DNA of 64,000 nt from the NCBI GenBank assembly GCA_965235115.1, contig OZ249448.1, positions 20,522,001 through 20,586,000 on the forward strand, read 5' to 3'. This document shows, piece after piece, positions 31,501 to 51,246 of the stretch. A program made the translations under genes and the position numbers. Each line of letters begins with the position of its first letter. Positions within the stretch are counted from its first letter, which is position 1. Under the pieces are notes generated by a model. The model was given only the letters and a program-made list of their open reading frames with translations, did no database searches and was not told where the DNA came from. This stretch comes from Laetmonice hystrix. Taxonomy: Eukaryota.

Positions 31501-34500
31501 CTCACCGGTGAGACAGCATCGACCCTGTCTCACACCTTGTCTCAACCTCATTAAAACCAAGCTAAACATTACTGACAATCCTACACTTCTATAGGCTTGC
31601 ATATTTAGGCCTATGTTGTTGCCTGCTCGATTTTAGGCCTATTCAAAGGAAAGATAGTTTACTTTGATAGCCCTACATTTTCATGTTGGACTACGGCTGC
31701 ATGCAGAATGATAAAGTAGGCCAGTGGATGAGTTTGCCAAGCGGCACCTTTGTTACGTCACAATGGACTGGTGATTGTTGCACCTATTGTGTCATCACGA
31801 TTATTCCATTTTCGGCCAGTGAGACGACTGAGACGATGTCTCAACTGAGCCAAAGCTCAATCTCAACTAAAAAACCCGATTTGAGCTCTGTCTCCACTGA
31901 GATCATCTCAGGCTCACCATGAGATGAGATGAGCTTGAGCCTGAGACGACGACCAAAAAACCGGGCCCAGACTCACAGGTTCCAGTGTGTTGATTTAGTA
32001 CATTCTCACGAGTATTTTTTGAATGAAAAATTTTATGAATATTTTAAATGTTTACCACTTTAGTTGGACCTGGGGAAGCGTGTTGTCATAAAACCCAGTA
32101 TTACCCAGAAAACCCAGTAAAACCCGGGTAAACCCAGTAAAACCCACTGGGCTGGGCAATAAGCTTAAAACCCGGGTTTTTGCCAACCCTGATTTTCGAT
32201 CGCCACCATGTTGTACTTTTATCCTGAATACAATAGTACAACGTATTTGATTGGCTTCCCACTTTGAGAACAGTGTTACCATTGGTCCTATCAATCTGCT
32301 TCATCGTACCCAGTCACGCGATACACTATCAACAGCGTGCTATTCAAAACACGTGTTGAGACCATAGACATCGTAATATCGGTTGAGGGGAGCTTCCAGA
32401 TCACTCTCCTAGAGCAGCTGAGGGGAGCTATTAATCACTTGCCTGCATTTTTTCAAAACCCAAGGTCTGTGGCACCAACTTACCAGAGTCGAACCTGGAT
32501 AATCCGACCATGTTAGTGTCAGATCTTCAATATGTCAGACTGTTGAATCTTGGCCAGATGCGGTGGGGTAGGTGTGGGGGGGGGGAGCTGTTAGTTCAAG
32601 TGATTTAAGTGGTATTGATAATCAAATAAAATTGTATTCTACATGTATAAATAAATATATAGAATAAAGGTTAGAAGTACATGTATGTAGTATTTGTACA
32701 TATATTTTTCAAAACTATATTATATACATGTAGTTATGGTTCAGACATCTAAGTCATTCGATGACTTTGTTCTGTTATTGGGATTTGGCTGATGTATTAC
32801 ATATCGTATCGTGAAACAAGACGTGTATCGTTTCAGCCCTAGTTAAGGTTTGACTGTAACTTCAGACCCCGAACAGACAAGGCAACTTTAGGCAGACTTA
32901 CTGCTCCATCAAATAACAGGGCTTCTTTAAGGGATGTCGTGTTCTGGAACTCCACATATGCAAACCCTTTGAATCTGTCTGTGTCTCTGTCTCGCACAAG
33001 ACGAATACTCTGAATCTGAAATAAAAAACATCAAACGTTTGCCAGGTTATTTTTAAACCGGGGTCTCCCTATTGATGGGAAAAGGTCTCAAAATTCATCT
33101 TTGATCTAACATTTTGCAAACAATTAGTACATGGAGGTTCTCAAGAAGAATTCAGCTGTCAGCCTACCTTTTTGTATGGATCAGAAGAACATTTAAAGAA
33201 AACTATTATTTTCATCAAAGATGATATTGATAGTTTCTTCTGAGGTTCATGCTGCTCACCAAGACAAGAACTGCTTCAACTTTGTACGACTTTGATACAT
33301 TTCCATGGTTTCACCTCATTTATTTCCAGCTGTGGAAAAGGGTTTAGGTGGCATTCTGTGCATTTGTTTATTTTTTTTCAATCCTCAAGCTATAAACTGA
33401 GCAGGATCTAATTAGATAGAGGCAATAATTAAACTATTAATGCACTTACATCAAGCTCTTTGAATATCTCTTCAACGTCTCCCTGGACGATGCCGTTTGG
33501 CAAGCCACCTACAAATGCTGTGTATGGTGGCTCAGTTGGAAACGGTTTCTGCTCTCTATCACGTCCACCTCCACCGTATCTTCCGCCACTGCCGCCGCCG
33601 CCACCTCTTCTATCATAGCCCCTATCACTGAAATGAATTTAACCAAAAAACCAACCAATAACTTACTAAATTACATTTATGGGTTACACACATTTTCAAT
33701 TTTCAGAGGCCTGAAGAGAGCATGTGGATGTCAGAGCCAGGCAAGTGGACTTTTGTAGTCCACTTGTCCTGTGGCAAGTGATTAATTTGAAAAATTGGCC
33801 ACCCCTGAATCCAATTGTTTAAAAGTTTAAAAGATCCTAGATCCGCCTAGGCCCATCCTGCTCTCTACCGGCCAAGGTCCCCTACAACAAGCCCCGGCCG
33901 AACGGGAGGCCCCCTACAAGTCCCGGCCGAATGGACTGGCCGAGACCCCCTACAAGCCCCAGCAGCGAGCGAGCGGCCGGCGGTCCCGCAGCAGTTTGAG
34001 CGAGTAAGCGAGTGGGCTCATGTGACGTGATACCCTTTTAGCCAGATTTTCGCCACCTGTGCCATTAATTCGCCAAATCCACTCACTCTGAGCCAATAAT
34101 ATCAATTTATACAGTGCAGGTGGGGAGGGAGTGGGCAGAGCTAGGCTCGTTTCTTGGCTTGCATAGCAGGTTGTCAATCACTCTGAGTGGCAGTTCGGCA
34201 GTAGGCATAGTCTTAGACCGTCACAATCTTGGCCAAGTTTCTTTAGCCCTCGTCAGCCGATGGCCAAGTAGAGGTGCCGGGTCAACTCGTACCCTGACCA
34301 ACTCGTACCCTAACGTACTCATACCCCAACCAAGTCGTACCCTGAAGTAGTTCATCGGTGACTAGACAACTAAATTAATGTCCAAGTATATCTAATAGGC
34401 CTATAGCCATAATATAGCCTAACTAACTCCTAAGTATCCTAACTCTAATAATTAGCCCTACACTAACGTCAGGGTACGACTTGGTATGGGTAGGCCTACG

Positions 34501-36116
34501 ACTTGGTCAAGGTACGAGTTGGTCAGGGTACGCTTTGGTCAGGGTAGGAGTTTGTACGGACCTAGGCCTACGACTTGACCCGGGACCCAAATAGAGTAGG
34601 GCTGGTTGTGCCTTGTGGCCCAGCCGGACAACTTTCTTGGGTACTAGGCATACCCTAGTTCGCGAAACGTTTCGCCAAAGGCAAAGCAAGTGAAGTGTTG
34701 GATTTGCCAGACTGGGTCATCAGTCGCCATTGGCGAGTGGGTATCGCGAACCTAGTTTAGTTTTTAAACGGTGTCTTCCAGAACACCGTTTAGTTGTCAA
34801 GTGACGCTGGCCTAGCGACTCTTGGACGCTCTGCGAAGAGGTCCGTTATCGCAACTTTGCGGCCTTCGTTTTGGTACTAAGGAGCATGAAATCGATTTTC
34901 ATAGAGAGCCACGGTATTGAAGTTTCTATTTCGACCGTGATTATAATTATTGGACAAATATAACGTCCACATGGTCCGGTTGTTTACGAGCAAGTCGGGT
35001 CCGGAGCTCCGTCAGCCATCTGCGGTGCACTGAGTGACCGGGAACTGATAAAAGTTAGATCGCTACTGGTACCCGAAACGGATAGCTTCACTCTGTGCCG
35101 TCAGCGTCTGCTTGATCAGTTAGTGCGACCTACTTATGCGGTCCGTTCCGGATCAACTGTAGAAGTGGAAAATACGCACACCCGATAAACTGGGTCACCG
35201 CTGGTCACCCACGCTGCGCTGTATTTGACCAAACAAACTGAGAATTTCACCTACTAAGATAACATCCAACAAAATACATTTACGTATCTGTTGAAGTAAC
35301 CTCTTTTGTGTACTCTCAGCAAGTTTCAGTGCCAAAAGTGGTCCGAAACATGACTTTGAGGTGATGATGCGCGATAGGACCGAGATAGAACCCCGGCAGC
35401 ATAGCAGTCGCTGGGGCATTTGTACTCGACGGTCAGAGTCCGTATGGACGTAAGGACTAGGACTCTGACTTGTTGGAGTATCGCGAACCCTGCTTTAATT
35501 ATTTGGTCTAGATACTGTAAGTAGCAAGATAAACTGATTTATTTCATTAGACTAGTCACTAGACCTACACCTACAGCCTGGCTAGGCTGGAATCTCAGAA
35601 TCTGCACGGGTCAAAATTGACAAAAACTTGAAAAAGACAAAATAGAATTAGATCTAACGTTAGACTAAAGTAAAGTTAGATGTAGATCTAGAACTAGAAG
35701 GCATTGATCTATTTCTTGTCCTCCCTAGTAGTACCCTTTCACTTTTTTAAAATTAAGGGATCATCGTGCAAACAGTCTTTGTTCAACTAAGTACTTGGCT
35801 ATTTTTGTCTAGGGCGACTACTCATGCAAAAAACACGCTTCCGAAAATCATATAAATTCAATTTTTCCTGGTCTGTCCCCGAATTCTGTCGTGAACGAAA
35901 TCGCAGACACGCGACCTGCGATTTTCGAACACTAAGGAAACCGGCACATTATGGATGCCCACACTCCGTCAACGCGAATCATTCAACACTGAAAATCGAT
36001 AGTCTCGAGGAGGGTTAACAGCCCTTAAAACTGAACACAAAACAGCTGCCTAACGATACATACTTGCCAAAACTAGAGCCGAATCCGGAATTGTAATCGG
36101 AAGAATAGTCCGCCAT
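28552..36116 (-). CDS. EIF4H: Eukaryotic translation initiation factor 4H, 6 coding exons (36116-36064, 33627-33450, 33015-32902, 30881-30776, 30518-30270/30246, 28706-28552)
   Basis: MADYSSD start; RRM with [14 protein letters not shown] (RNP2), [20 protein letters not shown] (RNP1) and [10 protein letters not shown]; RGG-rich segment; [14 protein letters not shown] and [12 protein letters not shown]-terminal motifs. All junctions are in frame. Confidence 0.95.
31363..31967. mobile_element. MITE, PIF/Harbinger-like (third GGCC-ended family, CAG TSD)
   Basis: Ends GGCCTGGTTCTTTGG ... CCAAAAAACCGGGCC; CAG at 31360-31362 and 31968-31970; subterminal GAGAC/GTCTC/TGAGC repeats. Confidence 0.8.
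32091..32191 (-). mobile_element. Solo terminal fragment of an hAT-like element
   Basis: Minus strand reads CAGGGTTGGCAAAAACCCGGGTTTT followed by CTGGGTTT(T/A) subterminal repeats; no partner end was seen. Confidence 0.5.
33808..34040 (+). repeat. Dispersed GC-rich element, copy A (eIF4H intron 1)
   Basis: Begins AATCCAATTGTTTAAAAGTTTAAAAGATCCTAGAT and ends GTGATACCCTTTTA; homologous to the reverse complement of 37166-37744. Confidence 0.85.
34277..34583. mobile_element. MITE with tandem subterminal inverted repeats
   Basis: CCGGGTCAACTCGTACCCTGACCAACTCGTACCC ... GGTACGAGTTGGTCAGGGTACG ... CGACTTGACCCGG; AT-rich CTAAC-containing core; no TSD resolved. Confidence 0.75.
34655..34755. mobile_element. 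~100-bp mini inverted-repeat element
   Basis: CTAGTTCGCGAAAC..TCGCCAAAGGC versus the right-end reverse complement CTAGGTTCGCGATAC..TCGCCAATGGC. Confidence 0.5.
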
Positions 36117-36200
36117 ATTGCGAATAGGCCATAAGGACCTGAAGTGCGCATGCGCTAAGTACCCACGTGACCTCGAATCGTAAACCACGTGCTCGAGAAA
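36117..36200. promoter_or_regulatory. Compact bidirectional promoter between the eIF4H and MYBBP1A start codons
   Basis: 84 bp between divergent ATGs; contains TGCGCATGCGC (NRF-1 consensus, 36145-36155) and CACGTG E-boxes at 36164-36169 and 36186-36191. Confidence 0.8.
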
Positions 36201-39200
36201 ATGGCCTCGGAAGGTGAAATGGAGAAATCTAAAGAAATGAAGGGGCGCACACAGCCCAAGGGGGAATTTCTGGCTTTCTTCTGGACACTTTCTGAAGAAC
36301 AGGATGGCCGCCGCCTGAGCGCAACGAAAGAAATGGTTGAATATTTATCTGATAAACAGAGAAATGTAAGTAATGTGGCAAGTACGCCTCCGGAATACCG
36401 CGGACCCCACGTGGAGATTTAGCGCTTGCCCTCCGCTCCTCAAGCCAACGTCAACAAGCCCCCAAAATATGTACTTCATACTATAATCGTTGTCAAACCA
36501 TGATTTATGAGAATCTACTGTAGAATATATAATATGAGGAGAACACTACTGGACCAACGATTCCTGAGCCTAACGATTTCGGGCCATGTGGGCTGTGACT
36601 GGTGTGGGCGATAATATGGGAAGTTCAGCTTTGTTATTGTAACCAAATTTATTTAACCGACCAGTTGAAGTACACACTCTTTGTCTACGTATAATACTGG
36701 GACAAAAGTTCCTCTAATATGTAATTTTAGACAAGTGTCTGTAAAGGGTGTGCGTCCATTTCGGCCGCCTGCTGGTTCGGCCGCCCGTATGGTTAACATT
36801 AGGGTGTAGGGGCCTATATCGAAATCGGCCGCCGCTCGAAGTCGGCCGCGCGTAAATTACGGGTGGCCGTACCCGACCAGAAGAGTTAAGGATAAGGTTA
36901 GGCCTAGGGTTAGTGATAGTTTAGTCCCGCGGGCGACTCCGACGGCAGAGCCGGGGGGTGCCGCGTGCAAAGCCCGACGGCCGATTTCGAGCGGCGGCCG
37001 ATTGAGTGACCCGTAGCACCGCGGCAGCGACCCGCGGTGAAGCTGGTCACTACAATATACGGGCGGCCGAACTGGCAGGCGGCCGAAACGACTGGCGACC
37101 CTGTAAAGTCCTATCCCAGCAAGCCCGAAAAATTTAAAAATACTTGAAAAAAATGTGTTTCACTTTGAAAGGGTATCATGTCACTTGAGCCGCAGCGAAA
37201 TGAGCCCGTAATATGAGCCCCTCGGCTCGGGGGGAGGGGGGGGCGAGCCTGCCTGGGGTGAGCGAGGGAGCGGTGACTGGTCAGTTGCCCGCTCAAACTG
37301 GCACGGGACCGCCGGCTGTTCGCTAGCTGGCGGGCTTCTATCTAGGGGGCCTCGGCCGATGTGGCCTACTGTAGCTTCTGCCGTACTGTACATTCCGCTC
37401 AGGCACCTTCCCGGCTGGGAGCTGTCACTGACTGGGACTTGCACGCGCCGGTAGCCGCGACAGTGTAGTTGGGTAGTGCACGGCTTTATCGCGGCAGGAC
37501 ACCGACAGGTCAGCTGCTTGCTGACAGGACTTGGTGCGTCCAAGTGACGGTGCCAAGCCGGGTAGATGCCCGAGCGGAATGTACAGTACGGCAGAAGCTA
37601 CAGCACGCCACTTCGGGACTTGTGGGGGGCCTCGCCCTCGGCCGATCAGTTTGGCCGGGGCTTGTTGTTGGGGGCCTCGGCCGGTAGAGAGCGGGATAGG
37701 GCTAGGCGCATCTAGGATCTTTTAAACTTTTAAACAATTGGATTATAATTGGCTGACCTACACCAACTGGCACCAACTAGGGCGCTGCTACTGCTTTGAC
37801 GGGACCCTCGCTGAGTTTAACCCGGCAGGCTCAAGTGATGGGCTCACATCGCGTCGCGCCGTGTATTCTTTGAAAGTCCTGATTGTAAGATTGCAGGGTA
37901 GCCATCTCTGATTTTGACTGTTTGTGTTTGTGACAGGGAGAAGTTCTTTGTAAGGACCTGGATTATGCACTGAAACGACTTCTCAAAGGTTTGGCATCAG
38001 ACAGGAAGTGGTCAAGGTTGGGATTTTCCACTGCACTGACACAGGTATTCCATCAGATTGTTGGTTTATGCCCTGTTAACCTATTTTATACAGAAATAAG
38101 TTCAGTCATAATTGATGAATGGCTCATTGAAATAACAAATATTTAAGCTGAATTATCTATTCTTTGGGATCATTCAGTAATGAATGAGTGTTTTTGTCTT
38201 TTCTGCCAGGTTTTGAGAAAATTTCCAATTGTGACAGCTGCGATCATGTTAGATATGTTGGAGAAAGCCAACGATGAACTTAGTGCTGGGGGATACGAAG
38301 ATAAAAGTGTAAGTCTGTACAGTCACTCAACTGGAACCAGGGTGGAGACATGTTAACACAGTCAAAGCAGGAGTTTCAGCTGGACTGAAACAAGTGGAAA
38401 CTGGAAATAGCACAGGTGTCGTGGAGGAATGATGTTCTTGAAATTTTAGTTATGAATGCGCATTAATGAAAGACAAAGGACAAGAATAGTTGGAGGTTAC
38501 CTATTCAAACCTGTGTCATAGCATCTGCTGTTTGCAGGATAAAAAGAATGCTGATGTTGGACGAGTTATGGCTTATCTTGCCCTCATGCAGTCAGGAGCA
38601 ATACATGAGGTAAGTTTTCTAACACTGTAAAGTTCTACTCGCCTGTACGCTAACACAGTGTGGATCAAATGTTTTCTTCAGTCAGGCGTAGACCTGACTG
38701 GTGATGTTTGCAACTGATGCGAATATCCAGTCAGATAGGCACAGCCAACGTTCAACTGAATCCTATCTAGGTATCCATCATGGTTGGAAGAACATTAAAT
38801 ATTGCTTTATTTGAAGGCTGATGGCAAAGATGTAGAACGTGTCGTGAAAGGTCTTGTGAAGATACGACGGAAGAGGAAAGACCTTCAGCAACTTGCGACA
38901 GAGGCTTTGTGTCAACTCATCGTTAAGGTAATGAAGGTTGTCGCCTCCACCATCAATCACCTGCACCTAGTTCCACCTTCGGAGAATTATTAACATTATT
39001 ATTGGCCAAGTTGAGTTCTGAGTAAAAGCCTTCTAGGTTTAGTTGGTCATGTGTTCAAAAGGCCTTCCCATCAGTAATGTTGTGTTTTCTGACTTTGCAG
39101 TATTAGTGGACGTTTTGTTGCATGCTGATGTCTCATTACAATTGAGACTAATTTTCTATAATGTTTGAAGGATTTCTAAATGATATTTGAATGCCCCTAG

Positions 39201-42200
39201 CTAGACAGCGGAAGGAATGTTCAGAGACCATGTGTGGCACTACCTGGAGGAAGAGTTGAGTACTGGATGGAAGGACTGTACTCCAGACACACTGCAGGTG
39301 TTATTAGTAGTCAACGACCATCACAAGGTTTGCAGGAGATTTCTACTCAATTCATTATTAATATCACTATCAAAAAGGAAATAATATTATGTACTTTTGA
39401 ATTGAAAAAAACTATTATTTACAGGTGGAAGATTTTCATATCTGTGTGATCTTCATCTGATTTCAGAGCTGTGTTAGCAAGAACTTTTTGTCTGAGCACT
39501 GGAATACAAAGAACATATTAAATACCAAGAATCATACCTTCCTGAAGGCCATCATGTCGGTGAGCATTTTCTCCCTCTCCCTTTTTAACAAATAAATTCT
39601 GCTAGAAAGATAGTAAAGAAATAATGATAACATATGATAACTTCTTTGTTAAAACTGTCTATATGTTCTCTATATTTCAAATTTAAGAAAACGTTAAATA
39701 TACTTTGAAATGGAAATGAGGAATATGTATAGCAAAGCTTTTGAGCATTGCAATCAGTTTTCATCTTGGAAGCTTTCATCCTCAGGAATCGGTGGGAAGC
39801 CTCCCTGTAGTTCACAGGGTGTGTCCTATGTTGGTGAGAAAAGCCATGAAGAAGGAGGAAGTCTTCACACATTTCTGGAGTGAAATCATTAATGGTATGT
39901 CTGTACATCCAGTGATATAGTGGCCATAGCAAACAATTGATTTTATGGGCTCTCCGAGGTCAAATATTGATGAATGATTCAAGGCTAGTCCAGATTTTAG
40001 TGTCTCTAACAAAAGTGTACTCTAGGACATTTAGCCCTTGTGTTTGTATGGCATGACACATTCTGAATATTGAAGCTATATTTGGAAATGGTTAAAAAAT
40101 GATCATTTGTTTTATAAATTCTTTTATATGTGCTGAAATATATATTTTTTTCAGATGGCTTTGCATCACAGAGTCTGAAGCATCGATCCCTTGCATTCCG
40201 CTTAGTGTCATTGTCATTGCCCTTAGCTACTACTGCAAAACAAGTAATTACCTCTGCTTCCTTAAAATTGTATGAATTAGCTTAAATTTTAGGGTGCAAA
40301 TAATGCTCATATTGAAAGACGACCCCAAGTGCTAAAACTTGCTTTGACAGGCATTGAAATTCATCATAAGCAGAAGAGATCAATTTTGATAAAGGGTTAA
40401 TTATTATGCAGTATGGGGAAGGTGAATAACAACCATTACAAAATTTAATCGCTTCCAATTTTAACTTACTAAATGTGCACACTGTCGGGTTTTTGGCCTT
40501 GAGATTAAGTGATGCTTTCTTCTAGGTGACGACCATCCTATCAGACAATGTGGTAAAGGCTATAGTGAACAGCAGGACTGCACACTTCAACCACAAACCT
40601 CTCCACAATGCAGCAGGATTCTTGGTCAGTATGGTAGACATTGACCATAGGGGGTACTAAGTTTTTGTGAATTATTAAAATTTATTTTAGGTCTCATTCT
40701 TTCATAATTTGTCAACATCAGTTTTATTATAGGTTTTATCAGATTTTCTATCAGTTAGTTTGTCGCTTTGACAAATTTTGAGTAGATATTAGTCTTTTAT
40801 TTTATGTTTCTTCATTGCAGATAGCTGATATCGTGAAATTTGCAGGAAACTGCCCAGACGGTGATGTCCAACTAGCAGTAATCCTAAGCCTACTGAATTC
40901 TAAAGAATCGTGTATGTTTGATCCAAGGACACGAACAAAGGCCATCAGTGAAATCGAAGAAAAGGTGTGCCCTTTCAGTTCATGTATGAACACCAGGAAA
41001 TGTTATATAAATATTAATAACACATGACCGAAAATGTACAGAACTTGATGCTGGTTTCTAATTGGAATTTTTTGAAATCTGATTTATTCCATGTGTCATT
41101 CAAAGCTGTTTCACTTTGCAGTTGAAACCAGATGCAATGGAGAAATGGACAGAGCTATTGATGGAAATGATCCTCGGTAGAGAAGAACTACCAACCAAGT
41201 AAGATGCTTTCTTCAGAGAATTGCATTGAAGCATTGGTGACAGTAGTTACCCTCTCTCTCCTACTGATTATATGTTATACTGATTATATCTTCATATTGA
41301 CTTCCATCAGAGAGGACAACGACATCGACATCGATACCCGAAAGTCATGGGCAGTGTTTGAGCTGAGTCGCTTACTCAGTAAGGCCAATGACAGGGAATG
41401 GCAGTTGAAAATCCTCAAGTTCCTCTTCCTTCATGGCTTTTTCAAGTTGGAAACACCTGCAGGCTTCGTACATGTACGTGCAGATAGTATTGCGAGGGTC
41501 TTAAAACCATCAAGAATATACCTAGAGTTTGATTTTTTTATGCCACATCTAGGACTACTTGTCGTTATGGTGTATGTTCTCTATTGAAAACAGGCTGTTT
41601 CACCAGGACTTTCTCTGTTTCCACAGGGCAGTAAACTTCTAGATAAGGCCCTGAGTCCCCAGACCTGCACAGATTTGCATACAGCCTTCTTCAAATCTTT
41701 GGACCGACTCGATGCCCAGCCCCACAAGGCTGATGGGTCCTCCAGACGAGACAAAAGACCCTACATTAGTATGGTCCATGAGGTGGTCCAGTATGCCCAG
41801 GTACTATTAGACACAAATAGGTTTCTTTTTATCAGGATCTCCAATATTTATGTTCACTGATATACTTTCTCCAGTATACTAACACATTCTGTAGTTGTAA
41901 CCTGACGATTATTTTTTTACTAATTGCTGCATTACAGACCCTTATGTCTACTGAAGGACTAGAGATGAGGCAAGAATTTTCTGTAGAAGTTAAACAGCAC
42001 TGGGAAAAGATGTTTGAAACAGTGGAGAAAATCGCGGAAAAGGTACGTGGTGTCATGTGTAATAGTTAAACAAAGAGAGATACCTGGGCAATTAAATAGT
42101 ATTGTTTTTGATTTTTTTACTTGGGGAGTTGATTGGCTGGTAGATAATAGATATAAGGTCTTTGGAGGTGTAAACAGACCATTATTATGCAATTCCTTTC

Positions 42201-45200
42201 AGCATGAGAAGGATGCCAAGATTGGCGAGGGACATGCATTTGAGTTGTTGTTCCTCTGTCTGGGCCTTCAACTATTTTCGGAGCCCCAAGCAGCAATGGA
42301 TATTCTTGAGGTAAGTCAATTAGAAGGGCAGATCGTTTAGCTGATTTTGTAAATTTTTGTTTCAGACACATCTGACGCTATGAGTTGTGTGTGAATCTTT
42401 GATAAATACTAAATAGATAAGTTGCTGTCTTTGTTTTCCTTTAGGATGGTTTTCAAGATCACCAGTTGCAAAAAAAAACTTAGAATTTGATGCCTGATTT
42501 TTATTGTAAGAGAAACTGTTCTCAGAGCATGGTTTGTCATGAAGTGACCTTTGTCCTACAGGATCTTTACATTTGTTACAACAAAGCCTTCAAACAGAAG
42601 AGACGGGTGTCTATGAAACAATCAACAGCAGGTGGTAGATTTCCATATTATAAAAGTTTTGAATTCATCTCTTTGGAAATGATGTGGAATCTGTAGATAA
42701 ATTGGATTATTCTGCCTATTTAGTAAAGATATTTGGGAGCCAGTTCTTAAAACTTTCATTCCTGGAATGCTGAGAAAACTGTGAACAAAGTGGCAACATT
42801 TTTTCGATACCCTTCATTAACCTTTTTGGGTTTGTTTGAGCTCAGGACCAGATTGGATGGAGGTTGTCACAGATGCCTCGCTCAGTCTGCTGTCACAGGG
42901 AAGCCACCTGGTGAGAAAGGTGGTTGTCTCAGTCTTCGCGATGCTCGCCCCCCATACAACAAAGGCATCACTGAACCTCATTCTCAATGTAAGTACATGT
43001 AGCTCCTGTTGCGTACCAACGTGTGTTATTACAAACAAGCAGGAAATTCCCATCATGTTTTTATTTTTAAATAATTGGATTATTACAAAAGATAGCATAA
43101 GGATGTTTGTGGATGTTTGTCTAATGCTTGTTGGTTGATGTTTAAGGTGTTTAAACCCAAGACAGAAGAAGAAGAAGACCTTCTAGAGTTTGAAGACGAC
43201 GGTGTGTACTCATTGTTAATCTATCAACTCTCAGAGCTGAAGTTGTTTGCCTGTGCTAATGTTTGCATTATTTTGAATCTTTACTTTCATCATGATCCAC
43301 ACACACTCGGGGCATATCAGTGCCTTACCTAGATCTGGGTAAGACTTGAGGCTATCTGTTGTAGATGAGGAAGATGCCGCTGAAGAAGATAAGGAAGGGC
43401 AAGCTGAGAAACAAGAAGAGGAGGAAAGTAGTGAGGAGGATGAAGAGGAGGATGAGGATGAAGAGGAGGCGGAAGAAGTAGACGAGAGTCTGCGTCTGTC
43501 CTTGAAACAAGCTCTTGGCAAGGCAGCCATTGGCAGTGATGAAGAGGTTACGAAGTCTTCCGTTATTTTCCAGTCTCCAGTCTTGTACAATTCAGAATAT
43601 TGAGATAACCGCGTCCTTGAGACCACCTTGCCAATACCGGTACCTTCACATTAAATCCTCTCAGTGGTAAGGTTAGAAAGACTGCAAGGTTTATTGCCGA
43701 CCCCGGTATAGTGTCAATACAATTCAAATATTCATTTGATTCTCTGTTGACCAATGGTGTTTTGACATAATTAATCTGTTTGACCCTTTGGTGAGCAGGA
43801 TGATGAGGAGTCTTCTGGGTCAGATTTTGATGATGAAACCATGTTCAAGTTGGATAATGCGATATCTGCTGCCTTCAAAAGTATGACAAAAAACAAGAAG
43901 AACTCGAAATACGTCAGGGAACAGAAACAACAACTGAAGGCGTACAGAATGAAGTAAGGACATGAAGTTAAATCCAAAACTTAAGGTCTGAAGGGGTAAA
44001 TGCTGAACGATATGAAGACGGAGGCTAATATAACTTACCAAAACGCAAGAATTATCACTTGTTTTCTTTGTTGCATCAGAATGATGAGTATGTTCCTAAG
44101 TAGCATTATGTTTTTCTCTTTGACCAGGTGTTTGGATCTGATTAAAGCGATCGTTGACAGTGAACCCAGTCCAAGTCTGGCCTTGGTAAGTCACTGTGTG
44201 CCCCATCATGGGGCCCCATAGTATGTGAACCGTCCGGGCACATTCTGTGAGCTGAGCGGTATTCAGAAACGGAAGAGAAATTAATTGTTTCAGTATTAGA
44301 CCCTGTCTACTGTACTTGTCTGTTTGATTGGAATGGATGGATAACAACAAGAATTCTACATGTAAAAGAAAGAAAATAAATGTGAAATTTGGCTAAAGGT
44401 GAAATTTGGCAGACATTGTGAAGAACCTTTAGGTACATGTACGTCAAAGATATGTGTACACATGTATAAAATATGTCATCGCGTGACATTTGTAGTGATG
44501 TGAGGATGACGGTGGCAGCATGTATGTTTACAGGAGCTGGTTATGCCACTCTTAGATTTGATGGATCATGGTGTCAGAGACAAAACATATCGGGACGAGG
44601 GAAACCGGGCCACAAAAATCTTCAGAGCTTTGGTAGCCAACAGAAAGGTATGTTCCCCCACCACTACAGCAGCACCAAAAAGCTGCTGAGAAGGGGAGGG
44701 GAGAGGGACGTCACCATTTTCATAATTACCTGTCATAAAAACGCTGATTAGATTGTATGTTCTTGCAGAGGAACTTGAAGGTGGCATGAAGTTTTATTTG
44801 AATGCCATCAGTAGCTGAAAGATTGGAAATGTTAAAATGTTAACTCTTTTTGGCAGGTCCTGCCCGATCCGACCCTAGATAGGGATGCTTTGCCAGAAGA
44901 GTTCCAAGAACTTGTAAAGCGATCCACAACAGGTAAGAAAAATAAATCATGTAACAAAAAAACCTTTTTTACATAACATATATTTGTATAGATTGGTAAG
45001 TGGCTCTGTGAGGTAAGAATGGACTAAGTTTATCTTCTTGCTTTCAGTTGCCGGTCCACAGATGGTGAAGGATGTAGCGCTCGCATGTCTCTTCTTGGTG
45101 AGCATTGAAGAGATAATCTTGATCGCATAATACTAATAGGAGAATTCAACAGTCTGAGTTCTTTACTGACTCCGAGTTGATGATTTATCATAAGTATTAT

Positions 45201-48200
45201 AACAAGGATATTTTTAATGGGTTTTTAACTTCACAGAGATTTTTGGCATGGTGCTGTAGACAGTTGTCTCAGTGTTGCTTGCACTTTGGCAAGAATCTGA
45301 ATCATCCATAAATGTAAAAATGTCAATTCAGAATTGCTGACGTGTGAGAACTTGACAGAGTTCATGGAGTTTATGTACCGGTACTGATGATTAATTGGTT
45401 TCTACGTCTACAGATCCGCCTACAGCTTGGCCTTGACATGGCCAGTGGGCCATCTCCATTGAGGACTCGTGCTGGGTCAGTCCTCAGGGCCAAGGTCAAA
45501 AAGGACAAGGTAAGCGCATACAGCCAGCAGATTTAGTAACACAAAAACTGTTACTACAATGCACAGCAAACTTTACAAACTTAACTTTCCTGCATGAGAT
45601 TAAGGTAGAAATCAAATCTAAGAGTGGCATAATCAGCATTATGTCAGATTTAGTGTTTTAATTGCGATGAACGTCGCCAGGTGGAGCTTGCGTTGATGCA
45701 ATAATTCCTCACTAGATGGCAGCCAGTTGTATAGCCAGGGAGTTGTGAGGGTTTCCACCAGAGGGCACCTGTGAAACTGTAGGGTAATGTTATGAGATCT
45801 GAAGTTGATGAATGTGCTGGTTGTATTGACAGGTGCTGGGAAACCAGCAGAAGGTTCTGGACATCATCAAGGCGAGTCTGGCTGATTATTGCAACAAGAG
45901 GTATGATAAATATTCAACAAGAGCCACATGTCAACTACTGTCCTATTACTTCTACCATTATGTCTGGGGCCTTATTAAAATCAGCGGTTTCCAGTAATAG
46001 GCTGAATAAAAAACAAACAAAAAATAGAAATGGGCTATTTCTATTGTAACATAAAAAGTGCCGTTATATGTTTGAGAAAAGAATGCATGAAAGGCACCAA
46101 CAATTACTGCACCTTGTTTTTTCTGTATTACAGAGAATCACACTTCAACCATATCTTTTTCTACACATTACTGTCAAGGCAGTCAGTAAGCATAGGCCAT
46201 TTTTTATTTTACTGTTTGAAATCGTTGATCGGATTTTTGTTATAGGGAATGTGTTAATTTTTATCAAAAGGATTTTCATCCAATACCTGGCAAATGTACA
46301 TACAGATGGGATAATTTAAAAAATATTAAATATACTGATTTTCTAAGTGACTAGTATAGGGACGCTTTGAATCTGCCTTGTCATCATTTGTTCATTGATG
46401 AATGATTTCAGTGTAGAATTAATATGATAAGACTTTTTGTTACTGTCCTTGATGTTGTTGTGAGTTGAGGCATGACTGTTGTGCGTTTCCTTTGCTCCCA
46501 GAGCATGCTGTGGGCCCTGACTGACCAACTCCTCGACCTGGCCACCAATATTGACGTGCGAGTCTTCTGTAGGGTGAGATTCCTTGGACTTTCTGAACAC
46601 AGCAATTCCCTTTCTGTAGTCTCCAGATCTCTGTTTTCATTATCTCTATTCATTAAAAACTTCAATCTTTGGTTTCAGACTCAAGTTTGGGCCATGCTGG
46701 CTGCAATGATCACAAGATCAACGGTAAGTGTTTGACTAAAGTGGATGGTTGATTTTCCTGTTGTAATTAATCTAGGTATATTTTAATTTCTGGCTAAGAT
46801 TGCATTAGTCACTGAGGAAGACGTAAATGAGAGATTTTTTAGACTTGATATGTGCTGTGTACCAGTATTTGTAAGTCCTTGCTCCAGTTTTTCAAAACAG
46901 TAATTTCTACCTTAATCTCATGCAGGAAAGTTAAGTTTGGAAAGTGTTTGCTGTGCATTGTAGTAACAGTTTTTGTGTTCGTTGACAGGCAGCTGACGTG
47001 GACTCGGAGAGTTGGTCTTCTTTCATGGACAGACTCGTTGCTGAGATACAGATGGTAATTAAAATTCTGTCCATTTGATCATGCGAAGGGCACAACCTAA
47101 AATGCCGTCTCTTTAACCATATAGGTTGTCGTCTTTTTCAGTGCACATTAAGGGAGAAAGATTGCTGACCAATTCACCAAGGCTGTATACAACAAAACCT
47201 TGCCAGAACCAGTAAACTCAAAATTCTGTCTACAGGGGTCACGTTCGTCCGCTATTTAGCGGATTTCCGCCATTTTTTTTCTAGAAATCGTCATTTCTGA
47301 GATCGATGCAGATCCGTTGAGCGCCGGGTGCAGATACACTTTCAGCTATTTTTTTTTGGTTCATGGCTCGGTGCCCTGTGTGTATGATATGATTGATAAG
47401 ATAAGGTTCTAGGGAAGATATTATCATCTAGGGAGGAATATGAGTTTCATTGTATGCGACATTTTGCAGGCCTTTGAGAGTATAGATATGGATGACTTAA
47501 AGCCGAAGATTGTCCAGGAACTACTGGCTGTTTCTGTGAGAGTCTGGACGACCTGCCCACACCTCCAGGTAAGTGTGAGACCTTCCAATTACACATTGAA
47601 GTGAATCGCTTTATCCTCTACACAATTACAATGTCAGTTTTTAGAATATTGGTATGCCTGATTTGAGTTCACAGGGTATGTAACCAGGACATTAATTTTT
47701 TTACAGTATTTGTGTTTTGGTGATTTCAGCAAAAGATGTTCTCTGATAATGTGATAGCCCAAATCAGAAAGGTGAAGGAACGGCAACTCACCAAGACTGA
47801 CCTGAAGCGTGCCTGCAGAAAAGTGCTTGTTTTAGTTGGGTGAGTGAAATTTTGCCTATACAAATGTAACTGCATCCGACAGTCTGTAAGTGTACAAGGC
47901 CATTTTCTCTACAAATTATACACTTGCCAGGAACATAAGAACTGAATGAAAAAGGCTTGGTTCACTACGTGTAGATGGAGTTTTTCTAATTCATTGTAAC
48001 TTTGTCAATTCTAGGAAAGTGTCTGAAAAGAATAGGCAGGCCAATCCAGCCGGAGATTCTGTTGCCAAGAAACGTAAACAAGACGCAGGGCCCACTGAGC
48101 TCAATGGCCATGGCAAGACGCCCACGTCAAGGAAGAAGAAGAAATCTGAGATCAAGGATGAAGATAAAGAAGCAAGTGTCCATGGAATGTCCCCATCCAA

Positions 48201-49428
48201 GGTAAAACCAAAGAACCTGGACGATTCCTTGGATGAGTTAAGCACCCCAAAGCGCAACCTATATGCAGAGATCAAGGGAGCGTCATGGAACAAAACAAAT
48301 AGGAAAAGGTCGACATCTGAAACCGCGGCCAACGGGACGTTTGTAGAGTCAAGTCAGGAAATGGATCAGGGGGAGGCACAGCTACCAACAACGCCATCAT
48401 CCAAGAAGAAGAAGAATAAGAAGAAGAAGAAGGAAAACGAGTCCCTGAGAGAAGTGTCCACACCAAAGGCCAGCCTGTGTGCAGAGATAGAGGCAGTATG
48501 CACGGAGGGCGAGAAGCGGTCGTCGCCACTTTCTACAGGCAATGGTGTGGAGAAGGATCACACTGAGGAGAAACTGCCCACGACGCCACCCTCCAGAAAG
48601 AAGAACAAGAAGAAGAAGAACCAAACCGAGTGTCTGAGAGAAGTGTCCACACCAAAGGCCAGCCGGTGTGCAGAGATAGAGGCAGTATGCACGGAGGGCG
48701 AGAAGCGGTCGTCGCCACTTTCTACAGGCAATGGTGTGGAGAAGGATCACACTGAGGAGAAACTGCCCACGACGCCACCCTCCAGAAAGAAGAACAAGAA
48801 GAAGAAGAACCAAACCGAGTGTCTGAGAGAAGTGTCCACACCAAAGGCCAGCCGGTGTGCAGAGATAGAGGCAGTATGCGCGGAGGGCGAGAAGCAGTTG
48901 TCGCCACTTTCTACAGGCAATGGTGTGGAGAAAGACTCAGAGGAGGATCACACTGAGGAGACGACGCCACACTCCAAAAAGAAGAACAAGAAGAACCAGA
49001 ACAATTCACTCAGAGAATTGTCTACCCCAAAAATTGAAGCAGTTTCAACGGACAAAAAAGGCGACAGCAGTTCGAAAGTGGAACCCTCTGCTAACGAATC
49101 CTGGACGCTGTTAAAAACACCAACATCAAAGAAAAAAGAAAGCGGAGTTGAAGAAGTTAGTGGAAAAGATGTAACAGAAGTTAGGTCTGTCAGGAAAAGT
49201 GCCAGGAAATCTCGCCAGTCTACGGTCGGTACAGGGACGCCAGTGTTGAGGTCAGCGGTCACGGTGTCCGATCCAGATGGAGTGGGAGAAGGATTGGAGG
49301 GAACGTTTACCCCAGTCAAAATGAACGACAGACGCCGGTCAGTGAGAATCTCAATGAGATTGGACGTTTCTTCTCCAGCAAGGTTAACACCAAAACGCAG
49401 GAAGTCTGTAGCAAAATCAGAATTGTAA
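36201..49428 (+). CDS. MYBBP1A: Myb-binding protein 1A / Pol5-family nucleolar protein, multi-exon, with a long Lys-rich last exon
   Basis: EFLAFFWTLSEEQDGRRLSATKEMVEYL (human EFLDFFWDIAKPEQETRLAATEKLLEYL), DLDYALKRLLKGLASDR (EMKYALKRLITGL), acidic tract followed by SLRLSLKQALGKAA, DDETMFKLDNAISAAF, VLDLIKAIV/ELVMPLL; basic C-terminal exon ending TAA at 49426-49428. Confidence 0.93.
36747..37100. mobile_element. MITE with an 8-bp target-site duplication (hAT/MULE/P-type TSD length)
   Basis: CTGTAAAG at 36739-36746 and 37101-37108 flanks long inverted arms TTTCGGCCGCCTGCTGGTTCGGCCGCCCGTAT / ATACGGGCGGCCGAACTGGCAGGCGGCCGAAA. Confidence 0.85.
37166..37744 (-). repeat. Dispersed GC-rich element, copy B (MYBBP1A intron 1), internally expanded
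   Basis: Its reverse complement matches 33808-34040 at both ends (35-bp exact match at the outer end), with roughly 300-350 extra internal bases. Confidence 0.85.
45660..45806 (+). ncRNA. Candidate intronic box C/D RNA, SNORD97-like, with a predicted guide for tRNA-Met(elongator) C34
   Basis: Box C-like GCGATGA 45664-45670; box D CTGA 45799-45802; guide GTTATGAGAT 45789-45798 complementary to the elongator tRNA-Met anticodon arm GUCUCAUAAU; central foldback; sense-oriented within intron 45510-45832 of MYBBP1A. Confidence 0.6.
48439..49040 (+). repeat. Coding tandem repeat, 189-nt (63-aa) unit, about 3 copies plus degenerate flanking copies, in the MYBBP1A last exon
   Basis: GAG(T)..CTGAGAGAAGTGTCCACACCAAAGGCC recurs at 48439, 48628 and 48817; peptide LREVSTPKAS.CAEIEAVC.EGEK..SPLSTGNGVEKDHTEEKLPTTPPSRKKNKKKKNQ. 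Confidence 0.95.
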
Positions 49429-51246
49429 TCAGTTTATAATGTGAACAGCAATGTTCAAGAATAATCTAATTTTAGCGGTGTAAACTTCCATGGCGGGAAT
49501 GTCGTGTCAATGTTGGATTCAGGCCAAGGTATGTTAATACGTTTGTGTATCTGAGTGTATACCAAGTAGGTAAAGAATCGATAACAGGCGTGGGTGAAAT
49601 ATAGCTGAAAGTCAATAAATAATAGTAGACGAAGGAAGGATTTGGATTTGTTTTGTTTCCATGCTAGATGAAAATCGTTGAATATGATTGAACTTTGAAA
49701 AGGACAGGTCTTTCTATGGGTCGGGGAAAGTCGAGGGGTTTTGTCTTCCTGGATGAAGTTGGAATTTTGATCCTTCAAACGTGAGGTCCATTTTTATATC
49801 CATATAATATCGTGACAGATTATTGTTTATTATTTATATAATTTATATTTTTTTTTAGAAAATGTTGGCGACCGATACAGCATTAGGCAATTGGTAGACT
49901 GCCAGTACTAAAATTCGATGAGGGGTTCTGCTGAGAGTGATGGCATTGTCTATCGGGATAATGTGACTACATGTATTTGAATTATAAAAAGCTATCACGG
50001 CTGCAGTGCCAGACCGTGGGAGACGAAGTCGTATATTGGAATGAATGGTGCACTAATCTAATGGTTCTTGGCCCACTTAACGACCGCATAGCGTCTAGGC
50101 GCTATATATGGCAAAGGTCGTCGGTTATTGTGGCAGAACAATGTCTCTAAAAGAGACCAGCCTTGTCAGACGTCGCTATTCGTTACTTGATATAGTTTTT
50201 TCGCACATTTGCCTCCCCGCCAGTTGCAGTCGGCACATGGGAACGATGTGGAGGCGGGGAACTTGAGACGTTTTTTAACCCCTTATTAGAGGAGGGACTG
50301 TCCTAAAACATTAGAACTGGCATTTTTATTACGTCACGTACATAGAAATACACGTTGGCTTGATTTCATTGCCATCAGTTTTGATATGTCATCCCTTTAA
50401 CCTGAAATAGTCGGTACAAAGCTACATCAGCTACAGAGAAGCAGACGGGTTCTCGGGGTTCTGGTATAATTACCAGTTTTACAACGGGTGTTGGCATTAT
50501 TTCACCTTTACTGATAAAGTTGCATACACAATTAAAGTACTTTTAAAAGTAGGCCTAAGCCTGATTGTCGCCAAAGTCCGATAAAAGTTAACCATGTTTT
50601 TTTTTCTGGACACATGTATGGACGTGTAGGCCTGGTAGTAAGTGGAGACCTGAGAACAGTACCTCGCCGTATAGTTAGGGCTGAAGTCTCGGGTGTAGCA
50701 TGTATACCCTAGTATGGCCTCGTTTCAGTCAGAATCTGGCCTCGTTTTAGTCAGTCTCATATACCGCTTTCAGACTACAGCCGAGAATGCGCATTGATGC
50801 GCAGCTTTGCGTTGCATATAAAGTATAGCAAAGGGCGAATGACAAGAACGGATCTGGCGGACGAGGAGAGGGTCAACTGCCCTCTCATGGGTCATTCTTG
50901 GGGTTGGTAACTCGAACAAATCGCAGTGGATTTCAATGAAACTTTCCACATGGGTTCATAATCATAATGGCCAATATCTCGGGCAAGTTCGATTTTCCCA
51001 TAACATCTTAGGAAATGTTGAACCATGCTAGCAATGTCGAGGATAAGCCAGTTTAGCGTCAGTCCCGTGGCGGGCTTGTCTTTAAGGCACCGTATCCTGG
51101 GAAGGGGGGGGGGGCCTCTAAAATAAATTATAGACTTTTTTGGAAATATCTAACCTTTATTGGAGCCACACAAAGGGTGCTGATGCGATCGCAGACTTTG
51201 TAACCCCCCCCCCCTCAGGTCACTTGGGAGGATACGGCCCTGACGT

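What the first reader, a model, noticed from the sequence alone, without database searches (positions are those of the whole stretch)
45660..45806. Candidate invertebrate SNORD97-like guide RNA for wobble 2'-O-methylation of elongator tRNA-Met, hosted in a MYBBP1A intron
Seen: box C-like GCGATGA, box D CTGA, a weak terminal stem (AATT/AGTT), a central foldback (GGTGGA/TCCACC, TCCTCAC/GTGAGGG, TGGC/GCCA) and guide GTTATGAGAT directly before box D. Pairing with the metazoan elongator tRNA-Met arm G30-U39 (GUCUCAUAAU) gives 8 Watson-Crick and 2 G-U pairs, and the D+5 base (G45794) faces C34; initiator tRNA (C33) would mismatch. Established: vertebrate SNORD97/SCARNA97 and an archaeal C/D RNA guide Cm34 of this tRNA. 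From memory, human SNORD97 also has CGATGA, CCTGTGA and TTATGAGAT(A)TGA in the same order, and CCTGTGA is at 45768-45774 here. Inference: RNA-guided tRNA wobble methylation extends to this invertebrate lineage, in a different host gene. Caveat: box D is only 30 nt from the acceptor and could double as the branch point.
Basis: partly seen in the sequence, partly recalled or inferred. Interest (0 to 1): 0.8.

Follow-up and report, generated by a model that had tools for sequence, protein, structure and literature searches.

The report
Probable chance look-alike of SNORD97
The motifs are really there in a MYBBP1A intron, but this animal's genuine tRNA-Met guide RNAs (three clear SNORD97 genes) lie in another gene on another chromosome, so the stretch flagged here is most likely a chance look-alike.

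Summary
The stretch lies in a transcript-proven 323-nt sense intron (45510-45832) of a DNA_pol_phi/MYBBP1A gene. The genome's elongator tRNA-Met genes carry the predicted target, with C34 opposite the fifth base before CTGA.

The element is not a SNORD97 family member. Rfam SNORD97 (RF01291) gives no hit here, even at E<=10. The same model finds three tandem copies (55.9, 45.9 and 38.9 bits; cut-off 45) in separate introns of a CHD1 orthologue on contig C1. Those copies keep the UGCCC/GGGCA stem, the AAAGACGCGUUAU element and an 11-12 bp guide. The window element shares only the 9-nt guide core, CGATGA and one 7-mer, and similarity upstream of the guide is at shuffle level.

The guide plus D-box 13-mer occurs at 26 unique genomic places against 18 for a reversed control. 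A heterozygous A45792C change destroys the pairing on one haplotype. The D box sits 30 nt from the acceptor, on the likely branch site. The terminal stem is only A-U and G-U pairs.

RNA evidence and close relatives were not available.

Odds: chance look-alike about 0.68; real extra, redundant guide about 0.2; decayed relic about 0.08.

SNORD97 candidates in invertebrates were already published in 2019.

The parts
36201..49425 (+). Host gene, MYBBP1A / DNA polymerase phi family (approximate span of coding exons)
   Evidence: Collinear Pfam PF04931 hits on exon pieces (profile positions 1-28, 368-424, 576-622, 703-755). The nearest proteins are named Myb-binding protein 1A-like in Owenia, Lingula and Lamellibrachia.
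45414..45509 (+). Upstream coding exon
   Evidence: Spliced transcript contig in run X4.
45510..45832 (+). 323-nt GT..AG intron that contains the candidate
   Evidence: Joint 45509/45833 in the RNA contig of X4.
45658..45663 (+). 5' half of the putative terminal stem (TTAATT)
   Evidence: Pairs with 45803-45808: 4 A-U and 2 G-U pairs.
45664..45670 (+). Box C-like GCGATGA (C instead of U at position 2)
   Evidence: In the minimum-free-energy fold it is sequestered in a small hairpin with 45673-45677.
45768..45774 (+). CCTGTGA, a possible C'-like motif
   Evidence: Identical 7-mer in bona fide copy A only. Not significant: p about 0.19 against shuffles, and 5 of 25 chance guide sites score as high.
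45789..45798 (+). Putative guide GTTATGAGAT (complementary to tRNA-Met G30-U39; G45794 faces C34)
   Evidence: A45792 is heterozygous A/C in the sequenced sample, and the C allele abolishes anticodon pairing.
45799..45802 (+). Box D-like CTGA, overlapping or adjacent to the probable branch-site region
   Evidence: It ends 30 nt before the acceptor. TTGAT (A45808, 24 nt from the acceptor) fits the yUnAy branch consensus (read from the sequence).
45803..45808 (+). 3' half of the putative terminal stem (AGTTGA)
45833..45900 (+). Downstream coding exon
   Evidence: Spliced transcript contig in run X4.

Best explanation
The stretch 45658-45808 is ordinary intron sequence of MYBBP1A. By chance it combines a 9-10 nt complement of the tRNA-Met anticodon loop, a CTGA, a near-consensus box C 126 nt upstream, and A/T-rich flanks that can pair. 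The CTGA/AGTTGAT region most likely serves as the branch-site region of the intron. The animal's real machinery for guide-RNA-directed Cm34 of elongator tRNA-Met is a set of three SNORD97 genes, one per intron, in the 3' part of its CHD1 orthologue (G000 C1:11865183-11867968, minus strand). That the window element makes no stable RNA is inferred, not shown.
For: - The Rfam SNORD97 model gives no hit on the intron at E<=10, nor on the whole gene at E<=1. It finds three full-length copies elsewhere at 55.9, 45.9 and 38.9 bits.
- Those copies keep elements conserved from vertebrates that the window element lacks: the UGCCC/GGGCA stem, AAAGACGCGUUAU, and GAUUAUGAGAU plus AUGA.
- Similarity to the family upstream of the guide is at shuffle level: p=0.70 over the whole upstream part and p=0.19 over the last 40 nt.
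- The guide plus CTGA 13-mer is at chance frequency genome-wide, 26 unique places against 18 for the control. The variant with ATGA has 62 places against 30.
- A much better 13-nt guide plus CTGA exists at C11:4223095 without a canonical box C, so such matches occur outside snoRNAs.
- A45792C is heterozygous in the sequenced sample and removes the anticodon pairing.
- SNP density in the element is 3 in 147 nt, no lower than in the surrounding 1.5 kb at 24 in 1501 nt.
- The D box is 30 nt from the acceptor. Bona fide copies A and B lie 107 and 203 nt from their inferred acceptors.
- The stem has no G-C pair, and I saw no D' box.
- The MYBBP1A loci of Ptychodera, Lamellibrachia and Capitella carry no such guide.
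Against: - The complete arrangement is rare. Only this one of 26 guide sites has a box C-like motif with a contiguous flank stem. It is the only one of 649 CTGA sites in the window with a stem of 5 or more pairs.
- My estimate is 0.01-0.3 chance sites per genome, and fewer still in a sense intron of a nucleolar ribosome-biogenesis gene, which is the typical kind of snoRNA host.
- Box C with C at position 2 is also the SNORD97 family's own variant.
- This genome places many snoRNAs per intron (earlier notes s1-337669 and s1-330518, untested here), so position in the intron may matter less than in mammals.
- Expression could not be tested. The only RNA run lacks the bona fide SNORD97 copy too.
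- No close relative was available to test conservation.
Confidence: 0.68

Rival explanations
1. It is a real, expressed box C/D RNA, either a very diverged SNORD97 paralogue or an independently evolved guide. It is processed from the MYBBP1A intron and directs, redundantly with the CHD1-hosted SNORD97 copies, 2'-O-methylation of C34 of elongator tRNA-Met through a 10-bp duplex.
For: - It has a K-turn-competent box C (GCGAUGA) and box D (CUGA), a 6-bp flank stem, a sense-intronic position in a nucleolar-protein gene, and D+5 exactly on C34.
- The arrangement is rare among guide sites and among CTGA sites.
- The family is clearly prone to duplication: three copies here and two in vertebrates (PMC6601510).
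Against: - There is no SNORD97-model hit, and none of the family's deeply conserved non-guide elements is present.
- The guide has only 8 Watson-Crick and 2 terminal G-U pairs, at -12.6 against -18 to -21.5 kcal/mol.
- One haplotype carries a guide-breaking allele, and diversity is not reduced.
- It sits 30 nt from the 3' splice site, overlapping the likely branch site.
- I saw no D' box.
- The guide is absent from the MYBBP1A loci of three other invertebrates.
Confidence: 0.2
2. It is a decayed relic of a former SNORD97-type gene copy. It is homologous but no longer functional, and keeps only fragments: CGATGA, CCTGTGA and the guide core plus D box.
For: - The motifs follow the same order as in the family, and the box C variant CGAUGA is shared.
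- Polymorphism is at neutral levels, including a guide-breaking SNP.
- A weak, apparently degenerate fourth match to the SNORD97 model exists on C20 at 30.3 bits, so decayed copies may occur.
Against: - Alignment to the family beyond the guide is no better than for shuffled sequence or for other chance guide sites.
- The D box here is CTGA, not the family's ATGA.
- I saw no flanking marks of retroposition or duplication, and the element is single copy.
Confidence: 0.08

Closest known systems
SNORD97 / SCARNA97 (SNORD133), Rfam RF01291; Vitali & Kiss 2019, PMC6601510
   Same: The 9-nt guide core UUAUGAGAU lies directly before a D box, with the fifth base facing C34 of elongator tRNA-Met. Box C has C at position 2 (CGAUGA). 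The element is intronic and in sense orientation. Its length (~147 nt) is near that of human SNORD97 (142 nt model).
   Different: - It scores below detection with the family model.
- It lacks the UGCCC/GGGCA stem and the conserved AAAGACGCGUUAU element.
- Its guide is shorter by 2-3 pairs.
- Its D box is CUGA, not AUGA.
- Its host is MYBBP1A, not EIF4G2 or LARP4 as in human, nor CHD1 as for this genome's true copies.
- It is polymorphic in the guide.
This genome's own SNORD97 copies (G000 C1:11867746-11867968, 11866576-11866814, 11865183-11865419, minus strand, in CHD1 introns)
   Same: They share the predicted target and the guide core, and they are also intronic.
   Different: They are 223-239 nt long, match the Rfam model (two above the cut-off), have G-C-rich stems and 11-12 bp guides, and lie 107 and 203 nt (copies A and B) from their inferred acceptors.
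Archaeal box C/D sRNA guiding Cm34 of elongator tRNA-Met (Haloferax volcanii; Joardar et al. 2011, cited in PMC6601510)
   Same: It shows the same target nucleotide reached by a non-homologous C/D guide. This is the precedent for an independent origin under the rival reading.
   Different: It is an archaeal sRNA, is not intronic in a protein gene, and has no sequence relation to this element. It was not examined here.

Membership tests
SNORD97 (Rfam RF01291) | Covariance-model score at or above the gathering cut-off (45 bits) | tested here: not met
   No match at E<=10 on 45500-45900, none at E<=1 on 34000-50000, and none at gathering on the whole window. The same model scores 55.9, 45.9 and 38.9 bits on the C1 copies.
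SNORD97 (Rfam RF01291) | Conserved terminal stem UGCCC/GGGCA and 5' element AAAGACGCGUUAU after box C | tested here: not met
   Both are absent from the window element. The alignment with the three C1 copies and the Rfam consensus shows no correspondence.
SNORD97 (Rfam RF01291) | Invariant D-box-dependent antisense element placing C34 of tRNA-Met(CAT) at D+5 | tested here: inconclusive
   The core UUAUGAGAU and the D+5 rule are met. The family's GA(U) extension is replaced (G-U pair at U39, mismatch at C40). One haplotype carries A45792C, which breaks the pairing.
SNORD97 (Rfam RF01291) | Conservation of the gene in related species | not testable with these tools
   No close relative was retrievable. 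The nearest MYBBP1A proteins are only 30-43% identical in this region. The distant loci L066, L067 and L068 lack the guide.
Box C/D snoRNA (generic) | Box C RUGAUGA near the 5' end and box D CUGA near the 3' end, able to form a K-turn | tested here: inconclusive
   GCGAUGA has one departure, at the looped-out position 2, and CUGA is exact. The sequence is compatible with a K-turn, but such pairs occur by chance.
Box C/D snoRNA (generic) | Terminal stem bringing boxes C and D together | tested here: met
   There are 6 contiguous pairs directly flanking the boxes, but all are A-U or G-U.
Box C/D snoRNA (generic) | Internal D' and C' boxes | tested here: not met
   There is no CUGA-like D' box between 45671 and 45767. 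Only weak C'-like strings are present: TGATGC at 45693 and CCTGTGA at 45768 (read).
Box C/D snoRNA (generic) | Accumulates as a stable RNA bound by fibrillarin, NOP56, NOP58 and SNU13 | not testable with these tools
   The only RNA data set (X4, contigs) holds spliced mRNA only. It lacks the bona fide SNORD97 copy as well, so it says nothing.

The most novel reading that the evidence does not exclude
The MYBBP1A intron encodes a second, structurally unrelated box C/D guide for Cm34 of elongator tRNA-Met. It would coexist with three canonical SNORD97 genes. That would be either an extreme divergence or an independent origin of a tRNA-targeting snoRNA within one animal genome.
Probability: 0.15. 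Interest if true: 0.5.

Novelty: not a real feature. Interest (0 to 1): 0.2.

Why it matters
If the window element were real, it would show two unrelated scaffolds aiming at the same tRNA wobble base in one animal. That would be a modest addition to a published theme.

As it stands, the useful results are these:
- The flagged element is probably not a gene.
- This lophotrochozoan has three unmistakable SNORD97 genes, in a host gene (CHD1) different from the vertebrate hosts.
- Their ends are conserved almost base for base with the vertebrate consensus.

This supports the published view (PMC6601510) that RNA-guided Cm34 of tRNA-Met is ancient in animals. It also gives a clean positive control for any RNA experiment on this species.

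Tried and rejected
- **Rfam scans of the window.** Gathering on the whole window, E<=10 on the intron and E<=1 on the gene all found nothing.
- **Expression.** Two run searches found one sample only. Its RNA-like run X4 (contigs) shows the spliced mRNA but holds neither the candidate nor a bona fide SNORD97 copy, so it is uninformative.
- **Conservation.**
  - The representative search with the best exon found nothing closer than about 62% identity.
  - Lingula P0010 has no contig on record.
  - The Owenia gene range is too long to fetch.
  - The search with the 62-aa ORF over the upstream exon found nothing.
  - The Ptychodera, Lamellibrachia and Capitella MYBBP1A loci lack the guide. At least the two annelid loci appear to have no intron at this position. 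All three are too distant to count as a real test.
- **Supplemental Fig. S3 of PMC6601510** (the invertebrate candidates) is an image and is not held as text.
- **Homology through CCTGTGA and CGATGA.** I first thought these shared motifs argued for homology. Shuffles and the other 25 guide sites show the similarity is at chance level.
- **L050 (C11:4223095).** It has a perfect 13-nt guide plus CTGA, and I considered it as an alternative gene. It has no proper box C or stem and no Rfam hit.
- **C/D-like pair at 35361/35465-35534.** It is a weak 4-bp case and was not pursued.

Full report
**Observation**

- GCGATGA at 45664-45670
- CCTGTGA at 45768-45774
- GTTATGAGAT at 45789-45798
- CTGA at 45799-45802

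TTAATT (45658-45663) pairs with AGTTGA (45803-45808), giving six contiguous pairs, all A-U or G-U. The predicted fold of the stretch is, if anything, less stable than shuffles (z = +1.74). It also sequesters box C in a small hairpin.

**Context**

Exon pieces along the + strand from about 36.2 to 49.4 kb hit Pfam DNA_pol_phi collinearly. The nearest database proteins are named Myb-binding protein 1A-like in Owenia, Lingula, Lamellibrachia and Capitella. The host is therefore MYBBP1A in a lophotrochozoan, probably an annelid or a near relative.

One public run of the same sample (X4) behaves as RNA. A 1777-nt contig joins 44932/45048, 45097/45414, 45509/45833 and 45900/46134, all with GT..AG. 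The candidate therefore sits in a proven 323-nt sense intron. Its D box ends 30 nt before the acceptor. TTGAT (A45808) is the best yUnAy branch-site match and lies inside the 3' half of the putative stem.

**Target**

The genome holds about 100 tRNA-Met(CAT) genes with GTCTCATAATC in the anticodon arm. There are two variants (…GTAAGTC…CTTAA and …GTCAGTC…CTGAA). The 10-bp pairing (8 Watson-Crick, 2 terminal G-U) with G45794 opposite C34 is correct.

**Family test**

Rfam has a SNORD97 model (RF01291, 142 positions, cut-off 45 bits). It gives nothing on the intron at E<=10, or on the whole gene at E<=1.

Run over the whole assembly, it finds three full-length matches in tandem on contig C1, minus strand:
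- 11867746-11867968, 55.9 bits
- 11866576-11866814, 45.9 bits
- 11865183-11865419, 38.9 bits

The printed alignments show near-identity to the vertebrate consensus at both ends:
- the UGCCC/GGGCA stem
- CGAUGAUUA
- AAAGACGCGUUAU
- GUCC..UGAGC
- GAUUAUGAGAU followed by AUGA

These are the animal's SNORD97 orthologues. Exons around them hit Chromo, SNF2-rel_dom, Helicase_C, HTH_CHD1_Hrp3 and CHD1-like_C, so the host is a CHD1 orthologue. There is one copy per intron. Copies A and B lie 107 and 203 nt upstream of their inferred acceptors. Those exon borders are inferred from reading frames, not from transcripts.

**Comparison with the true copies**

In a joint alignment the window element matches the family only at TTATGAGAT.TGA. 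CGATGA and, with copy A, CCTGTGA are shared as short strings.

Local alignment of the sequence upstream of the guide against the three copies is no better than for dinucleotide shuffles (p=0.70). Restricted to the last 40 nt it gives p=0.19, and 5 of 25 other genomic guide sites score as high or higher.

Guide duplex energies are -12.6 kcal/mol for the window element. They are -18 to -21.5 kcal/mol for the true copies.

**Chance**

TTATGAGAY+CTGA occurs at 26 unique places plus two satellite arrays, against 18 for the reversed control. With ATGA as the D box there are 62 places against 30. One place (C11:4223095) has a perfect 13-nt guide plus CTGA but no canonical box C or stem and no Rfam hit. 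Guide-like strings are therefore common.

The whole arrangement is rarer. Three of the 26 sites have N[TC]GATGA within 260 nt, which is about what chance predicts. Only the window site also has a flank stem. Of 649 CTGA sites in the window, three have such a box plus 4 or more flank pairs, and only the candidate has 5 or more.

From these rates I estimate 0.01-0.3 chance sites per genome, depending on how loosely the stem, the box and the D-box variants are defined. About a sixth of those would fall in sense introns (my assumption). This is why I do not put the rival reading below about 0.2.

**Polymorphism**

The DNA runs of the same sample show 24 single-base differences in 1501 nt. Three lie inside the element: 45733, 45746 and 45792.
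- A45792C is heterozygous in run X1 (depth 9 for the C allele against 12.2 for the A-allele contig).
- It changes the guide base that pairs with U36, two positions from the target pair.
- With C, the best duplex with the tRNA is no longer at the anticodon.
- T45746C breaks the TCCTCAC/GTGAGGG foldback.

There is no sign of constraint.

**What could not be tested**

- Expression. X4 lacks the candidate, but it also lacks bona fide copy A, so it does not capture snoRNAs.
- Conservation. No close relative could be fetched. The MYBBP1A loci of Ptychodera, Lamellibrachia and Capitella have no guide plus D box. The two annelid loci seem to lack this intron as well. At 30-43% protein identity this is weak evidence.

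**Literature**

Vitali & Kiss 2019 (PMC6601510) showed that SNORD97 and SCARNA97 guide Cm34 of human tRNA-Met(CAT). They already reported single SNORD97/SCARNA97 candidates in insects, Ciona and plants, with invariant D-box guides.

**Verdict**

The best reading (0.68) is a chance look-alike in an ordinary intron whose CTGA/TTGAT region serves splicing. The rivals are a real, redundant extra guide (0.2) and a decayed relic (0.08).

The interesting objects are the three CHD1-hosted SNORD97 genes. They are new members of a known kind.

Noticed in passing
G000 C1:11865183-11867968 minus strand (L069 1501-1723 and 331-569; L071 1501-1737): There are three bona fide SNORD97 genes (223-239 nt; 55.9, 45.9 and 38.9 bits), one per intron, in the 3' part of a CHD1 orthologue. 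This host differs from the human hosts EIF4G2 and LARP4. Both ends are nearly identical to the vertebrate Rfam consensus.
   Followed up: partly
L069 about 1685-1700 minus strand (5' element of the SNORD97 copies) against tRNA-Met in L005 and L007: By direct reading, the family's conserved GACGCGUU after box C is complementary to tRNA-Met AGCGCGUC. That tRNA stretch is immediately 5' of the G30-U41 stretch paired by the D guide. The complement is 8 pairs with the minor tRNA variant and 7 with the major one. It may be an accessory pairing element. I did not check whether this is already described.
   Followed up: no
G000 C11:4223084-4223107 (L050 390-413): CAGATTATGAGAC plus CTGA is a perfect 13-nt complement of the tRNA-Met anticodon arm at the D+5 register, and it is single copy. 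About 0.07 such 17-mers are expected per genome. It has only a poor box C (GGTGATGTGA 132 nt upstream), no stem and no Rfam hit. A 60-nt tandem repeat lies just downstream. It may be an antisense tRNA-Met-derived fragment.
   Followed up: partly
G000 C20:8694060-8694201 plus strand (L072 1501-1642): This is a weak full-length match to the SNORD97 model (30.3 bits, below the cut-off) with a degenerate guide. It is either a decayed copy or noise.
   Followed up: no
G000 C8:16467280-16511083: A large tandem array of about 90 elongator tRNA-Met genes has a spacing of about 415-530 bp. Smaller clusters lie on C4 and C19.
   Followed up: no
window 45528-45652: The DNA runs of the same sample show a structural difference between haplotypes (123 nt skipped or replaced, with loose ends at 45538, 45612 and 45637). 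It ends 6 nt before the putative 5' stem (45658) of the candidate.
   Followed up: no
G000 C2:944355-948267 and C29:18852164-18852819: Satellite arrays of 66-bp and about 51-bp units each carry TTATGAGATCTGA, which inflates raw counts of the guide motif.
   Followed up: no
window 35361-35538: GGTGATGA at 35361 has CTGA at 35465 and at 35534, and 4 flank pairs in each case. This is a weak C/D-like arrangement upstream of the MYBBP1A start. It has no Rfam hit.
   Followed up: no
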